From Ascidiella aspersa (lineage: Eukaryota), in NCBI GenBank assembly GCA_963924565.1, contig OZ004608.1, forward strand, positions 11,966,001 to 12,030,000: a stretch of DNA of 64,000 nucleotides, read 5' to 3'. The position numbers and the translations under genes are program-made. Under the pieces are notes generated by a model. It did not search any database. It was not told where the DNA came from and saw only the letters and a program-made list of their open reading frames with translations. Positions 14,573 through 52,638 of the stretch are shown piece by piece (the stretch's first letter is position 1; each line of letters begins with the position of its first letter).

Positions 14573-15396
14573 CCAAAATTACGACAGCTTGACAAAATGT
14601 GGACTTTTTGTTGAATTTTTGTTTGAAACAGTGTGAATAAAACTTAGTTAATCATACAGACAAATGGATATGTTTGTTTGTCGTTGCGTTAAATTAAATT
14701 ATAAAGCCGGATACACAACATTTTTTTCTCGTAGTATATAGTTATCGGGCATTAAACTTTTCTATTGTACTTTTGGTTTGGTTTACGAACTTAACTGTTT
14801 CGCCCCACAGAGCACTACTGTCTATATTTGGTCAAAACCAAAGAGATTATTATCTCTTTGGTCAAAACGAAGCAAGAGAAGCGGCTGTTTAGCTTTTTTT
14901 TTAGAAATTTATATTGCTTCATCTATTATTATTAAACTGAAATATTTTTGCAGGATTTAAAGTGCTTTATATAAAATATAATTTTGATCGTTGATACCGT
15001 TGTTTAGTATGCTTTATTACAAATAGTGCCAGCAAACATGAGAAAAAGAATACAAGAAACAAGAATTTATATAATTTTATATGTAACTTACTCCTTTTAA
15101 ACCACAATACGTTTTTTCTTGAGTTACGTTGACACGATTTGATCAATTTATCCAGAAGTAAAACGAGAAAATAGCATCGGAATTTAGTTTGACAACGATT
15201 GATGAAGCCTTTATTTATCATAATGACGTTGGTTTACGAACGTTAGCTGGTAGCGACAAATGCAAAGTTAGGGGTGAGGTTCAGGTTTTGGGTTAGCAGC
15301 TTAAGCGAGCAAAATGCAGCGTTTGTAAATAAAGGCATTAATTTATGAATTATAGGTCTAGCGTGACATATTCTATGGATATATGTGTGCGATGAT

Positions 15397-42400
<27,004 letters not shown>

Positions 42401-47851: not shown

Positions 47852-48899
47852 CATTAATAGCAATTTGAGTGGTACTTGTTTACATTTTTTTTAAATGCGC
47901 AAAGTTTATGAAACAGAGTCTTACTGCATTTTTACATCGCAAAACGCAATACAAAAGTTTTAGCAACAGCTTGGTATTCTTCAACTGCTAGTGTTGTGAC
48001 CGGAGGATCAATGGTCCTAAGGTGGTGTAGAGCAGTGCTTCTTAAACTCTTTTAGTTTTGTTCACCCTAGCATATATCTCCAAATTTCATTTACCCTGGT
48101 CTTATGATATGATAAAACTATCTTGTTTATCATTTTTATATATGGCCGTATTTGTTGTTTATATTTCACTGAACAGGTTGAACTCCCGGAATATCCACTC
48201 TGCTCGCAAGCTATTATCCATTTCCCATGGTTCACCCTTATTCCACTCCTTTTGGTTGGTTCACCCCTGCAAAAAAAATTATTCACCCTGGGGTGAACCA
48301 TTCACCTCATTAAAATACGTGGTAGAGCATTACAAACCTAGTTAGCCCCGCAGTAGCATGTATGAATGTGCTATGTATGAATACTGAATTCATCAATATT
48401 TAAAAATTTGTAATCAAAACAAAGGAATCCTTTATGTAAATCAAAAACAAGTTACTAGGCTTTAAAGTTTAAAACTTTGTACATAACTAAAAAGTTGTGC
48501 TGGGTCGAAGACCGCAAACTTTGAGAATTAACTACAATGCTATAATTTCCAATTAAATTGATATAGGTTTTAAAATAAGTACAACCATTATTGATTACTA
48601 TGAAATATAAAAAGTTAAAATAATTGTTAGATCAGGGCATAGTTTCTTCACCTTTTTTCTCCCATAACATTTGACCAATTAGTTGTTGTGCAATAAAGAG
48701 ACTTACTAAAACTCGTTTAATGCTAAAATTGAATAACATTGCACAATTTGAGATGTATGTAATATGACAGTCTTGTTGGGGTAAATTTAATTTTAGGAAA
48801 TCACATATCTGGTCTTATTTGATAGGAAACACTTAGCCAGATCTATAACCTAAAGTAAAGTCCACAACAAAAGCAACTCAGATTTTAGAGCACTGTATA

Positions 48900-48905
48900 T
48901 TTATT
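48900..48905 (-). terminator. Candidate polyadenylation signal for WDR4 (and probably for FAM204A)
   Basis: AATAAA on the minus strand ~30 nt after the WDR4 stop codon. Confidence 0.55.
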
Positions 48906-48936
48906 ACCGCTAAACAAATCACGCAGGTATAAGAGA

Positions 48937-50171
48937 TCAGCCCTCCAGTTTAATTTTTTTGGTGGTTGTGCCCTTACTAAAAACTTTTCCTTCCTCTTTT
49001 TTCTTATAGAAGGCAAGGTATTTTTTGCCCCCCATTTGAGGTTTATACAGTGGAATGTATGATTTTATGACAAAATCTTCACAGGGCATTTCTTTAAGAA
49101 TGTCACTTAGACTTTCAATTCGTAATTCCTTTTGGCTTTCAGGAGAACATTCAAAGCAGGTTACGCAGGGCAGTGATTGATTTTTGTATAATGTATAAAT
49201 TGTGGGTAATATTCCCTCATTTTTCAAAAAATCAAAATCCATTAATTCACTATCTTTAGGAAGTTGTAAAGCATACATGAAATGCAATTGATTGTCTTTT
49301 AGTTTATACAAATTTGTGTGAGACTGCTTTAAACAACCAATTGCAACCATATTCATCGATTTTGCCACAATAGATGGGATTTGTTTTTCTGTTGGTTCTT
49401 CTGAGTTTTCAGCTTTCCCTGATTGCTGGTCAATTTTTATAATTTGTAAAGATGTCCCGGTGTTAATCTCCCATAACCTTGCAGTTCCATCTCCAGACAA
49501 GGACAGCAGCAACTTATCAGAGAGAAGACACAGACGGGAAACAAAATCTGTGTGGCCAAAACAAAACAACTCAATGATAAACGGATTTTGGCGATTGGAA
49601 ACGCGTATCTTTTCATCTCTGTCAGCGGTAATAATGTACTGATCAGTGCAGACAACATCCAGCAACATTGATACATGCCCAAGAATTGCCCCCTCATCTT
49701 CACTGGTGTCCTCACTATTAGCAACTTCAACACCAGAACCTAAAAATATGTTTAAATGATTAGAGATATTATGTGGTTTACTTTTACACACTGAGGGTAA
49801 ACAATAATTCTTTTGATACCTTGCAAGTTAAAGGAATACAGGTCTCCAGATTTGTCCGCCACCAATATTTCTTTTTCATCAGTGGAAAATGAAAGTGATG
49901 TAGATCTTCTGCTTACTTCAATTATTTTATGTTCCTCAAAACCAGAGTCTATATCCTTAACTTTCCAAATTACAACAGTTTTGTCAGAGTAGAGTGCAGC
50001 AAAATGAGAAAAACTTGGCGAAAACAAGGCATAGTCCAGGCGTTCTTCCTCAGATTTACTTTTGTACTCATGGATATAGCTGAACTTGTTGCTTGTGCCC
50101 TTGGCAATCACTTGAATACCCTTGCGATTCCCAAGCACAACAAAATGAGGTGATATCCGAATGATGGCCAT
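48937..50171 (-). CDS. WDR4: tRNA (guanine-N7)-methyltransferase non-catalytic WD40 subunit WDR4/Trm82, 2 exons, 384 aa
   Basis: Exons 50171-49820 and 49739-48937, separated by an 80-nt GT-AG phase-1 intron. Diagnostic motifs LVADKSGDLYSF, LGHVSMLLDV, IITADRDEKIRVS, FCFGHTDFVS, LLSLSGDGTARLW. N-terminal length is consistent with ATG 50171 as the start. Confidence 0.93.
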
Positions 50172-50172
50172 T

Positions 50173-51349
50173 TTACATGTTACTCTTGGTCTCCCACTTT
50201 TTCTTGCTTTCAAATCTAAAAGAATAAAAATGATTTACAAAACAATATTGCACTTAAGTTTTAGTGACTTGAATCTGAAGGTTAAACTTTTAAAATTATT
50301 ATGCAAAACAATAAATGTGTAAAATAAGAAGATATCTCCTCGCCCTTACACGTAAATGACCACAATGGCTTCAAATGGATCAAATATTCTTTAGACTTTC
50401 CTGTCTTAATCAGAGTCAGTCATTTGAGAAAATATGAATAAGAGAAATATCTTTCACCACAAAATAGGGCATCATCCGTCTCTTAATTCAAATGATTCAT
50501 TCAAATTACAACTTATAAATGACTAAATTTGATTAGGACAGGAAATTCTAAAGAATTTTGGAATATGTAACTGGTTATATTTGTTTTAAAATCCAGCCCC
50601 AGTACAACATACTTCATAAAGTTTAAACAACTTACGTCCAAGAAAGCTTCTTTCTTTTTCTGTTGATTTTCTTTTGTTCCTTTGCTTCCTTGCGTTTATT
50701 ATACTTTTGGACTTCTGCAACTTTTTCTGCTTGTTCAGTTAAATCGTGTTGGCAGAGGTTAGAGGTTATTGAAACAGCCTTTTCAACGTCTCCCTTTTTT
50801 AATGCTTCCTTTAGTTTTCTTTCTTCCTTAAATTCCAATAAAACTACAATCTTGAAAAATTATATTAAACAAAAACATTTAAATATATAATATACCAATA
50901 TTTTGGAAATCCGAACATCAACTTTTTGAGATAATTTTCCTTGGTTGTTTGATGTCTTATATTGCTTTCTTGTGCTAAAATTAAATTTTAAATGGTAAGG
51001 TTGCCCATCAAACCCTACTGCCATTTGATTGTGCATTTTTTACCTTTGAACTGAAGTTTCTGATTTATTTAAGTTGTCTTTGGAGCTGGGAAGTCTTGCC
51101 TTTTGGTTTGAAGTTAGATCTAAATTTCTTTCTGCATCAATTTTCTGTAAAGTAGGTAAGTGCATCTTCCTTTTGGTTTATTGTGTGATAAAAAAAGCAT
51201 TTTTAAAACACAATTAATTGCCAATAAAATACCCTTACCTCAAGCACAGAAGATAACAATATTTTCGAATCATTTACGGATTTGCCAGTTTCTTCTTCAC
51301 TGCTATCAGATGTTGAATCAAACTCCTCGTTTAAGAGACCTTTAAACAT
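50173..51349 (-). CDS. FAM204A: Protein FAM204A (C10orf84) homolog, 5 exons, ~182 aa
   Basis: Exons 51349-51239, 51144-51044, 50974-50896, 50850-50636, 50215-50173 (549 nt). The N-terminus MFKGLLNEEFDSTSDSSEEE and the spliced C-terminus ALKKGDVEKAVSITSNL...RKRKKLSWTFESKKKWETKSNM* match the FAM204A pattern as recalled ([20 protein letters not shown]). Boundaries of the 45-nt third intron are less certain. Confidence 0.88.
50386..50556. repeat. Inverted repeat / MITE-like insert in the last FAM204A intron
   Basis: ATTCTTTAGACTTTCCTGTCTTAATCA is reverse-complementary (25/27) to TGATTAGGACAGGAAATTCTAAAGAAT, with inner arms AGTCATTT / AAATGACT. Confidence 0.75.
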
Positions 51350-52638
51350 TCATTTGACAACCAAGAATCTTGAAAAGAACAGTTTATAATTTTGTAATTA
51401 CGAGTATGACTACTTCAACAATACTCATCAGCAAACGTAATGCATTTTACTTTAACGTTGAAAGTTGGCCAATGTGTTGTGCTTGGTTCGTTACGCATGA
51501 TTTACCACCGTGGTGCGAAGGGATGATTATTATTTTTTTTGTCGAATATTAGGAATAAGTATAATAAAAACTGAATTGATGGACCCCCAGGCCCAACAAA
51601 AAATAGGCCTACTGCGACCTTTGTAATAAAACACTGTAAAAGTTCGCGAGATACTTTTATTGTCTAAAAAGTTTAAGTATATAGCGAGTTTGTTTCGAAT
51701 AAAAAATAAGCATGTCGTGACTTATAACAAAGAGATAATAATCTATTTGCTTATAAGTAGGGCGAATATTTTTTGACAAAAAAAATGGGAAACTTTGACC
51801 TAAATAATTAAAATTTTGACAAATTTTGACCTGAAAATAATTTATTTTGACAAAATTTTGACCAATACGGTTAAAATTACTTTGAACTTATATCAAAATC
51901 AATTTTTATTTTCAAAGGGAATTTTTTCAGCGCCTCGTAGTATTGTCACATTTCTATCCACAGCATGGTCGGATGCTGCCCGCCAATGTAACCAACCAAC
52001 CCTTCTCTTTTACAAACTGGCAGCGGGCCAATGTAAAAATTTCTCCCTTTGGGCTAAACTCGTTTATACTTCTGGTTCTGGCATGTTTGAGCTTTGACTG
52101 AATCTTTTCAGCCTACACAGGCATCGTACATTCCCTACAATCCACAACTATAAAATTGAGGTTTTTCTATTGGTAGCCTATATTTGAACGATTTTTCGCT
52201 TTGCACAAGTCTATTCCACGTTTTTTAAATAGCAGTCATGTAACATGGAAAATTTATCGGCCCTATTTAAATTACAGCATAAACTAAAAGTTTTTTAATA
52301 GTAATATACCTTTTCAATGTGATATGATAATATATATCTCCATATAGAGATCAGAATACATTTAGTCCTATATTTAATAGCACATTCGCGCGAGAAGGTG
52401 ACTGGTAATAACAGGCCTTAATCCATTCACAATGTATTTGGTATTTTTATTGAAATTACTCAAAACCCGTGTATTGTGTTCCAAGGCGTTTTAAGTTACA
52501 TTGTGACGTCGCATTTGAATGACTACAAAAAAGCTGTGTCTGGTTAGTGTTCGGAAGCATCTTAATTTTAACCAAACAAATATGGTACCAAATATGGTAC
52601 GCATGTATATTCTGAAACTTGTAAGAATGGCATTAAAC

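What the first reader, a model, noticed from the sequence alone, without database searches (positions are those of the whole stretch)
50173..50230. One acceptor, two uses: a cis 3' splice site for FAM204A that may double as the 5' entry (trans-splice) site for WDR4, leaving an AUG-UAA start-stop uORF
Seen: if an mRNA begins at 50215, its first AUG is the last Met codon of FAM204A, immediately followed by UAA, 7 nt upstream of the WDR4 AUG. The WDR4 AUG has the strong context AAAAUGG. Inference: a choice between cis- and trans-splicing at this single AG would switch between FAM204A and WDR4 output, and the minimal start-stop uORF could tune WDR4 translation. SL trans-splicing in this organism is assumed, not shown.
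Basis: inference. Interest (0 to 1): 0.75.

Follow-up and report, generated by a model that had tools for sequence, protein, structure and literature searches.

The report
Two-gene FAM204A–WDR4 messenger RNA in sea squirt
In this sea-squirt genome two unrelated housekeeping genes, FAM204A and WDR4, share one exon and are read out mainly as a single two-gene RNA, so how the second protein gets made is an open and testable question.

Summary
The sequence observation is correct. On the minus strand an exon starts at 50215 behind an AG. It carries the last 14 codons of FAM204A (ATG 50178-50176, TAA 50175-50173). One base later comes the WDR4 start (ATG 50171-50169, context AAAATGG).

The organism is an ascidian. 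Its genome holds hundreds of tandem copies of the 16-nt Ciona spliced leader followed by GT, so the assumed trans-splicing machinery exists.

Stranded RNA reads show the acceptor used in cis: 16 reads join 50636 to 50215. Depth is the same on FAM204A-only exons (15.5) and WDR4 exons (16.5). The WDR4 intron junction has fewer reads (9) than the FAM204A junctions (13, 23, 16). A spliced contig from a second study runs from FAM204A exon 4 to the WDR4 3' end.

No leader-bearing ends at 50215 appear among the rows shown. The data are shallow and 374 rows were hidden.

WDR4 is single-copy here. The main RNA is therefore a mature bicistronic mRNA. Neither route is shown.

The scan noted this same stretch before (s1-788228), and a similar shared-exon pair elsewhere in this genome (s1-801631).

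The parts
51239..51487 (-). FAM204A exon 1: 5' leader from about 51487 with three upstream ATGs, then coding from ATG 51349 (37 codons)
   Evidence: X3 spliced contig record 19 covers 51239-51487. The joint 51144/51239 has 13 reads in X4. Sequence, phases.
51044..51144 (-). FAM204A exon 2 (101 nt)
   Evidence: Joints 51144/51239 (13 reads) and 50973/51044 (23 reads, one letter between, which I read as a SNP at 50974). Phase.
50896..50974 (-). FAM204A exon 3 (79 nt)
   Evidence: X3 record 18 covers 50895-50974. The frame is kept. Its 3' border, a 45-nt intron at 50895-50851, is inferred from frame and GT..AG; no joint for it was among the rows shown.
50636..50850 (-). FAM204A exon 4 (215 nt), ending ...KRKKLSW plus 2 nt
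   Evidence: 51% identical to Phallusia FAM204A residues 104-168. X3 contig record 16 covers 50636-50827.
50216..50635 (-). Last FAM204A intron (420 nt). Donor gac|GTAAGT, acceptor TTTTTATTCTTTTAG. Longest intron of the unit.
   Evidence: 16 junction reads from 14 starts in X4, and X3 contig record 16. Splice signals.
50380..50562 (.). Inverted-repeat (MITE-like) multi-copy element inside that intron
   Evidence: Arms of 46 nt, 85% complementary. Word depth reaches 12,720-20,142 against 52-110 for single-copy flanks, and RNA reads lie on both strands.
50173..50215 (-). FAM204A last coding piece in the shared exon: (T)FESKKKWETKSNM plus TAA.
   Evidence: Same C-terminus as Phallusia FAM204A. 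Vertebrate proteins run three residues further.
49820..50171 (-). WDR4 coding exon 1 in the same shared exon (ATG 50171-50169; 117 codons plus 1 nt)
   Evidence: N-terminus matches Phallusia, Clavelina and Ciona WDR4. PDB WDR4 hits. Depth 12.7-14.3.
49740..49819 (-). The only WDR4 intron (80 nt)
   Evidence: 9 junction reads in X4 and X3 contig record 16. GT..AG with the cut shifted by 2.
48885..49739 (-). WDR4 exon 2: coding to TGA 48939-48937, AATAAA at 48905-48900, RNA 3' end near 48907-48885
   Evidence: The X3 contig ends at 48907, and X4 depth falls to 3.2 in bin 48836-48969 and to 0 below it.

Best explanation
This is one promoter-driven two-gene unit of an ascidian, running on the minus strand from about 51490 to about 48885. 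Its predominant mature RNA is a cis-spliced bicistronic FAM204A-WDR4 mRNA.

The acceptor at 50217-50216 is the acceptor of FAM204A's last intron. The exon behind it encodes the deeply conserved FAM204A C-terminus. WDR4 has come to lie directly behind a FAM204A that is three residues shorter than in vertebrates, leaving ATG TAA A ATG.

Shown:
- the layout;
- the cis junction;
- equal RNA depth over both genes;
- one spliced contig across both genes from a second study;
- WDR4 being single-copy.

Inferred: because nearly all WDR4-containing RNA also carries the full 182-codon FAM204A frame upstream, WDR4 is most likely translated from this bicistronic mRNA. A fraction of ribosomes, or their 40S subunits, that terminate at UAA would restart at the AUG one base downstream, which has a strong AAAAUGG context. 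This is termination-coupled reinitiation without a calicivirus-type rRNA tether. A rare SL trans-spliced WDR4 mRNA using the same AG may add to this.
For: -, X4 (stranded RNA): all exonic reads are on one strand. Junction reads are 13 (51144/51239), 23 (50973/51044), 16 (50215/50636) and 9 (49737/49818). No depth step occurs between the genes.
- mean depth is 15.5 over 644 nt of FAM204A-only exons and 16.5 over 1229 nt of the shared exon plus WDR4 exon 2. About 16.4 per base over 50176-50215 matches the 16 junction reads.
-, X3 (another study): a 1421-nt spliced contig covers 50827-50636, 50215-49818 and 49737-48907.
- zero depth beyond 51516-51649 and below 48835, so this is a unit of two genes only.
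- the WDR4 DNA and protein match only this place in the 308.6-Mb genome (1 match each; 5 candidates were scored).
- FAM204A ends at ...WETKSNM in Phallusia and here. In the 4 vertebrate proteins fetched it ends ...WETKSNMG[FY]M.
- the stop and the start are 1 nt apart, and the stop tetranucleotide is UAAA.
- Reinitiation after long ORFs at closely spaced stop-start sites is known in viruses and was reported for some human mRNAs (PMC10275272, passages; PMC3923131, abstract).
Against: - No translation data exist, so the reinitiation step is pure inference.
- Reinitiation after a 182-codon ORF is normally inefficient. Yeast does not normally translate the second cistron (section heading of PMC11952965).
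- The calicivirus/influenza B type tether is not available. UGGGA is present at 50196-50192, but it is just the conserved Trp-Glu codons, and this animal's 18S helix-26 region has no UCCCA.
- There is no unusual RNA structure around the site (z = -0.79).
- In Ciona, 72% of downstream operon genes have SL 5' ESTs (PMC2760879, passage), so the prior for SL use is high.
- The RNA sample is one run of unknown tissue read to 6%, and a minor SL form is not excluded.
- A contig across two genes does not prove a single molecule.
Confidence: 0.42

Rival explanations
1. The AG at 50217-50216 is used both in cis (giving FAM204A mRNA) and in trans by the 16-nt spliced leader. The trans product is a capped monocistronic WDR4 mRNA starting at 50215, whose leader holds the AUG-UAA start-stop. 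This minor mRNA, not the bicistronic one, would be the template for WDR4.
For: - SL RNA genes with the exact Ciona leader plus GT lie in 584-bp tandem arrays in this genome.
- Ciona operon genes abut without spacer, and most downstream genes are SL trans-spliced (PMC1488885, passages; PMC2760879, passages).
- Competition of cis- and trans-splicing for one acceptor is documented in Ciona (PMC11155486, section 12) and in Schistosoma, where long introns favour it (PMC5832876, passages).
- This intron is the longest of the unit at 420 nt, against 45-94 nt for the others.
- It is the only good acceptor upstream of the WDR4 AUG.
Against: - No loose end or cluster of ends at 50215 among the rows shown.
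- 16 cis-junction reads explain the depth there.
- WDR4 exons are not deeper than FAM204A exons, and the WDR4 junction has fewer reads (9) than the FAM204A junctions. A WDR4-only mRNA is therefore at most a small share in this sample.
- The paired donor is a consensus GTAAGT and the acceptor is the fourth of the unit, unlike the typical Ciona dual-use sites.
Confidence: 0.35
2. WDR4 has its own promoter inside the 420-nt intron, for instance in or near the inverted-repeat element. It would give a short primary transcript without the FAM204A donor, which is then trans-spliced at 50216 or used as it is.
For: The intron is unusually long for this locus and holds a multi-copy element with RNA reads on both strands. 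Intronic promoters feeding internal SL sites are discussed for C. elegans and Schistosoma (PMC5832876, passages).
Against: Depth in the unique part of the intron is 0.2 and 0.67 (bin 50444-50577). The reads over 50310-50443 carry the repeat family's variants and loose ends, so they come from other copies. WDR4 shows no excess depth.
Confidence: 0.08
3. The bicistronic RNA is a by-product or precursor, and the working mRNAs differ. Examples are a FAM204A mRNA polyadenylated inside WDR4 exon 1, or WDR4 translated by internal ribosome entry.
For: Unresolved dicistronic cDNAs exist for ordinary Ciona operons (PMC1488885, passage). The WDR4 junction count (9) is somewhat lower than those of FAM204A.
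Against: There is no depth step after the FAM204A stop and no AATAAA close behind it. The RNA is fully spliced and reaches the AATAAA at 48905-48900. No structured element is present and no Rfam family matches.
Confidence: 0.1

Closest known systems
Ciona-type SL-resolved operons without intercistronic DNA (Satou et al. 2006, PMC1488885; 2008, PMC2760879)
   Same: Ascidian; two unrelated housekeeping genes on one strand with no spacer; one promoter; a dicistronic transcript exists; the downstream gene is intron-poor; the same 16-nt leader gene is present in the genome.
   Different: In Ciona the upstream mRNA's poly(A) site abuts the downstream gene's acceptor, and monocistronic mRNAs dominate. 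Here the upstream reading frame runs 43 nt past the only acceptor into a shared exon, no 3' end forms between the genes, and the dicistronic RNA is the dominant form seen.
Acceptors used both in cis and in SL trans-splicing (Ciona, PMC11155486; Schistosoma mansoni, PMC5832876)
   Same: A canonical intron acceptor that could in principle take the leader; a long upstream intron.
   Different: Trans use is not observed here. The site is the fourth acceptor and has a strong paired donor. A trans event here would switch between two different genes rather than two isoforms of one gene.
Termination-reinitiation at overlapping or adjacent stop-start sites (influenza B M1/BM2, calicivirus VP1/VP2 with TURBS; PMC3035654, PMC10275272) and human overlapping-ORF mRNAs (PMC3923131)
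   Same: A long first ORF whose stop lies within a few bases of the second ORF's AUG; two functional proteins would come from one mRNA.
   Different: This is a cellular chordate locus with two conserved housekeeping genes. The UGGGA core is present, but its 18S helix-26 partner is absent in this species. No stable structure is present, and translation was not tested.
Minimal start-stop uORFs (AUG directly followed by a stop; the plant NIP5;1 AUGUAA case is recalled and comes from no call)
   Same: AUG-UAA directly upstream of a main AUG.
   Different: It would be a uORF only on a hypothetical leader-capped mRNA. In the RNA seen, it is the last sense codon and the stop of a 182-codon ORF.

Membership tests
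SL-resolved ascidian operon (Ciona type) | Same-strand genes with no, or under 100 bp of, intergenic DNA, transcribed as one unit | tested here: met
   1 nt lies between stop and start. One spliced contig and continuous equal depth cover both genes.
SL-resolved ascidian operon (Ciona type) | The organism has the SL RNA | tested here: met
   The leader from Table 1 of PMC1488885 plus GT matches 356 times forward and 528 reverse, against control 36 and 19. Exact copies sit every 584 bp on contig C3.
SL-resolved ascidian operon (Ciona type) | The downstream mRNA starts with the leader at an acceptor at the gene boundary | tested here: inconclusive
   No loose end or end cluster at 50215 in the rows shown. 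374 rows were hidden, depth is about 16 and 6% of the run was read.
SL-resolved ascidian operon (Ciona type) | The upstream mRNA is cleaved and polyadenylated at the boundary, and monocistronic mRNAs dominate | tested here: not met
   No depth step occurs after 50173. Mean depth is 15.5 against 16.5. The FAM204A frame extends 43 nt past the acceptor.
Dual-use cis/trans acceptor | Cis junction reads at the AG | tested here: met
   16 reads from 14 starts, plus the X3 contig.
Dual-use cis/trans acceptor | Leader-bearing reads at the same AG | tested here: inconclusive
   None in the rows shown. I estimate an upper bound of roughly 10-25% of molecules at the junction.
Dual-use cis/trans acceptor | First functional acceptor with a weak paired donor (the Ciona tendency, PMC11155486) | tested here: not met
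   It is the fourth acceptor of the unit and its donor is GTAAGT. This is a tendency, not a strict rule.
TURBS-type termination-reinitiation | Stop and restart codons within a few nucleotides | tested here: met
   UAA, then A, then AUG.
TURBS-type termination-reinitiation | Motif 1 (UGGGA core) upstream, complementary to the 18S helix-26 loop | tested here: not met
   UGGGA sits at 50196-50192, but it is the conserved Trp-Glu codons. In this genome's 18S the only TCCCA is at position 1588. The helix-26 region after position 1033 has none.
TURBS-type termination-reinitiation | Second protein made only when the first ORF is translated to its stop | not testable with these tools
   Needs reporters or ribosome profiling.
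WDR4/Trm82 | Sequence similarity to solved WDR4/Trm82 and to annotated orthologues over the whole length | tested here: met
   PDB 8h0n_A, 8d58_B, 7u20_B and yeast 2vdu_B. 395 proteins at E<=0.001 of 1159 candidates, the best named WDR4. The Pfam WD40-type hits are all below their cut-offs.
FAM204A | The conserved C-terminal motif ...W.FE.KK.WETKSNM, and the same length as an annotated orthologue | tested here: met
   Phallusia FAM204A is 182 aa and the model here has 182 codons. Four vertebrate FAM204A proteins share the motif. No Pfam family matches. Only 3 proteins reach E<=0.001 in 1.84 billion.

The most novel reading that the evidence does not exclude
A single-copy, conserved tRNA-modification gene of a chordate (WDR4, partner of METTL1) is routinely translated as the second cistron of a mature bicistronic mRNA. 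Ribosomes that have just finished the 182-codon FAM204A frame would restart one base further on, without a virus-type rRNA tether. Together with other shared-exon pairs noted in this genome, it would define a class of translationally coupled gene pairs in ascidians, distinct from their SL-resolved operons.
Probability: 0.35. Interest if true: 0.8.

Novelty: new variant of a known kind. Interest (0 to 1): 0.55.

Why it matters
Reinitiation after a long ORF that yields two functional proteins has so far been seen mainly in viruses (PMC10275272, passage). Tunicate operons are thought to be resolved into monocistronic mRNAs by the spliced leader.

Here a natural chordate locus carries its only WDR4 gene directly behind another gene's stop codon, on an RNA that is mostly bicistronic. 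That gives a clean system for asking two questions: whether animal ribosomes can couple termination to restart on cellular mRNAs, and how a rare trans-splicing event competes with cis-splicing at one acceptor.

It also matters for annotation. Standard pipelines will report only one of the two genes, or fuse them.

Tried and rejected
TURBS tether. The UGGGA 20 nt upstream of the restart looked like calicivirus motif 1. It is the Trp-Glu of the conserved FAM204A end, and the animal's own 18S has no complementary UCCCA in the helix-26 region. Rejected as an adaptation.

RNA structure. Folding 50215-50100 gave -25.5 kcal/mol against -23.0 +/- 3.2 for shuffles, and 42 of 200 shuffles folded at least as well. 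No signal.

Ribozyme or other known RNA in the intron, which could cut the donor from the acceptor. The Rfam search of 48800-52300 gave only two chance-level matches (E 0.28 and 0.57), both far below gathering score. Rejected.

Fossil evidence from a processed, leader-capped WDR4 retrocopy. The WDR4 DNA matches only itself in the genome. Nothing found.

A second WDR4 gene that would make this one dispensable. None at E<=0.001.

The same junction in other ascidians:
- A metagenome scan with P0004 found no relative.
- A degenerate junction pattern found 0 matches.
- Conservation of the layout beyond the shared protein ends in Phallusia is therefore untested.

These include the operon lists of PMC1488885 (Table S6) and PMC2760879, and the acceptor lists of PMC11155486. 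They may say whether the Ciona orthologues form an operon or take the leader.

Two-term paper search 'FAM204A' plus 'WDR4'. It returned 5 papers, all human or mouse expression lists judging by title and abstract. None is about this layout, and I did not open them.

Spliced models were never joined. Every search used single exons, and frames were checked by arithmetic on exon lengths.

Full report
1. Observation

On the minus strand the intron ends TTTTTATTCTTTTAG, with AG at 50217-50216, and an exon begins at 50215.
- Between 50215 and 50160 there are two ATGs.
- ATG 50178-50176 is followed at once by TAA (50175-50173).
- After one base comes ATG 50171-50169, in the context TAAAATGG.

2. Gene identities

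WDR4:
- The frame opening at 50171 reads MAIIRISPHF...
- Exon 1 alone matches solved human WDR4 chains (8h0n_A, E 7.3e-07; 8d58_B, 7.7e-07) and yeast Trm82.
- Exon 2 alone finds 395 proteins at E<=0.001 among 1159 candidates. The best are WDR4 of Phallusia mammillata (44% identity), Clavelina and Ciona.
- The Phallusia protein begins MAIIKSSPQF, so the start codon is right.

FAM204A:
- Exon 4 alone finds 3 proteins at E<=0.001 in a library of 1.84 billion.
- The best, P0121, is named FAM204A of Phallusia. It is 182 aa long and ends ...[18 protein letters not shown].
- The model here also has 182 codons and ends ...KLSW / (T)FESKKKWETKSNM.
- The four vertebrate FAM204A proteins found with P0121 end ...[16 protein letters not shown][FY]M.
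- The shared exon therefore carries the ancestral FAM204A end.

Exons were searched one by one and never joined. Frames were checked by exon-length arithmetic.

3. Organism and leader

- The best relatives are ascidians.
- I took the 16-nt Ciona leader from Table 1 of PMC1488885 and searched it, with GT added, in the window's own 308.6-Mb genome.
- It matched 356 times forward and 528 times reverse at up to 2 mismatches, against 36 and 19 for the reversed control.
- Exact copies lie every 584 bp in long arrays on contig C3. One copy reads leader, then GTAAC....
Earlier notes of this scan say the same (s1-801561 and others).

4. RNA

One call laid four runs on 48300-52300.

Run X4 is a stranded paired RNA-seq run. 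About 6% of it was read and 325 reads were laid.
- All exonic reads lie in one direction.
- Junction reads: 51144/51239, 13; 50973/51044, 23 (with one letter between, which I read as a SNP at the exon's first base); 50215/50636, 16 from 14 start places; 49737/49818, 9.
- From the binned depths, mean depth is 15.5 over the 644 nt of FAM204A-only exons and 16.5 over the 1229 nt of the shared exon plus WDR4 exon 2.
- The 40 exonic bases at 50176-50215 carry about 16.4, which is what the 16 junction reads supply.
- Depth is 0 in 51516-51649 and below 48835, so the unit holds just these two genes.

Run X3 comes from another study. Its kind is not on record, but its contigs lack the introns. A 1421-nt contig covers 50827-50636, 50215-49818 and 49737-48907.

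The tool warns that a contig across two genes shows no single transcript. The equal depth and the junction counts in raw reads point the same way, however.

5. What was not seen

- No loose end at 50215 is among the 24 rows shown. The six X4 rows, with 8-28 reads each, all sit on the multi-copy elements at 50314-50408 and 51794-51863.
- No cluster of molecule ends is listed at 50215.
- 374 loose-end rows were hidden, a 16-nt overhang is short, and 5' ends are poorly covered in such libraries.
- My estimate is that a leader-capped WDR4 mRNA is at most a small share in this sample. That means roughly under 10% from body depth and junction counts, and under about 25% from the end-cluster threshold.
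- Zero cannot be claimed.

6. Fit to what is known of ascidian trans-splicing

- Ciona operons abut without spacer, and the upstream poly(A) site touches the downstream acceptor (PMC1488885, passages).
- About a fifth of Ciona genes lie in operons, and 72% of downstream genes have SL 5' ESTs (PMC2760879, passages).
- Trans-splice acceptors in Ciona lie mostly in the 5' UTR or at the first cis acceptor, and their paired donors are weak (PMC11155486, abstract and section 12).
- Here the AG is the fourth acceptor of the unit and its donor is the only perfect GTAAGT of the five introns.
- In Schistosoma, competition at internal acceptors is real and is favoured by long introns (PMC5832876, passages). 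This intron is 420 nt, against 45-94 nt for the others.
- The idea is therefore known in kind and remains possible as a minor route.

7. How WDR4 gets made

WDR4 is single-copy. Its DNA and its exon-2 protein match only this place in the genome. It must therefore be expressed from this layout.

- Leaky scanning through a 182-codon frame is not credible.
- There is no internal start site in the unique part of the intron, where depth is 0.2 and 0.67.
- There is no structured element (z = -0.79) and no Rfam family.

Two routes remain:
- restart of terminating ribosomes at the AUG one base after UAA;
- a rare leader-capped mRNA.

I slightly favour restart (0.42 against 0.35), because nearly all WDR4-coding RNA seen is bicistronic and the stop-start spacing is minimal. 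Nothing here measures translation.

The virus-type tether was tested and fails. The UGGGA at 50196-50192 is just the Trp-Glu codons, and the 18S of this genome has no UCCCA in the helix-26 region (motif definition from PMC3035654, passages).

One further inference rests on the vertebrate exon-junction model of nonsense-mediated decay, which I recall and which comes from no call. The FAM204A stop lies 352 nt upstream of an exon junction. Such an mRNA might be unstable unless ribosomes go on through WDR4.

8. Comparison and novelty

- The locus works like an operon at the level of transcription, but it fails one defining feature of Ciona operons: no 3' end forms between the genes.
- It resembles viral stop-start coupling in geometry, but it is not a TURBS member.
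- It is a new variant of known kinds (tunicate operons, and animal bicistronic mRNAs).
- The paper search 'FAM204A' plus 'WDR4' returned only human and mouse expression studies, judging by title and abstract.
- The search 'Ciona' plus 'bicistronic' plus 'reinitiation' returned four papers, none on such a locus by title and abstract.
- These two searches are the only basis for saying I found it nowhere in print.
- This scan flagged the same stretch before (s1-788228; its follow-up is withheld). It also flagged a similar shared-exon pair, LAGE3/MALSU1, elsewhere in this genome (s1-801631). I did not test that one.

9. Limits

- There is one counted read-laying run, one raw-read RNA run of unknown tissue, and hidden rows.
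- Two metagenome scans were empty.
- Supplements of the Ciona papers were closed.
- The 45-nt intron at 50895-50851 is inferred, not shown by a listed joint.

Noticed in passing
window 50380-50562 (and 50314-50430): A MITE-like element sits inside the last FAM204A intron. It has 46-nt inverted arms that are 85% complementary. DNA word depth reaches 12,720-20,142, against 52-110 for single-copy flanks. RNA reads lie on both strands, with loose ends that run into other copies.
   Followed up: partly
window 51758-51863: A very high-copy short repeat lies about 270 bp upstream of the FAM204A transcript start. Word depth is 50,145-105,558 in the two DNA-like runs, with RNA reads on both strands. 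Its family was not identified.
   Followed up: no
window 51350-51487, minus strand: The FAM204A 5' leader has three upstream ATGs and a good acceptor-like site, ttcttttcaag|att, near 51372/51371. X4 depth drops from 11.4 (51248-51381) to about 4.8 per exonic base upstream. The whole unit may itself take the spliced leader there. This was not testable after the single read call.
   Followed up: no
G000:C3:5.22-5.45 Mb (loci L005-L008): Spliced-leader RNA genes lie in head-to-tail arrays with a 584-bp period, in two blocks of opposite orientation. The arrays are interrupted every few units by gaps of about 7.7-8.4 kb.
   Followed up: partly
window 50851-50895, minus strand: A candidate 45-nt intron with 11% G+C (GTATAT...CAAG) is needed to keep the FAM204A frame. 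No joint for it was among the rows shown.
   Followed up: partly
window 49924, 50004, 50040, 50974: The RNA run's animal differs from the reference at these exonic places in all of its reads (15 of 15, 12 of 12 and 13 of 13 for the first three). The change at 50974, the first base of exon 3, is synonymous. No difference is listed in 50169-50217 in any of the four runs.
   Followed up: no
window 49740-49819: WDR4 here has a single 80-nt intron and a 3' UTR of only about 35-55 nt. This fits the intron-poor downstream genes described for Ciona operons (PMC2760879).
   Followed up: no
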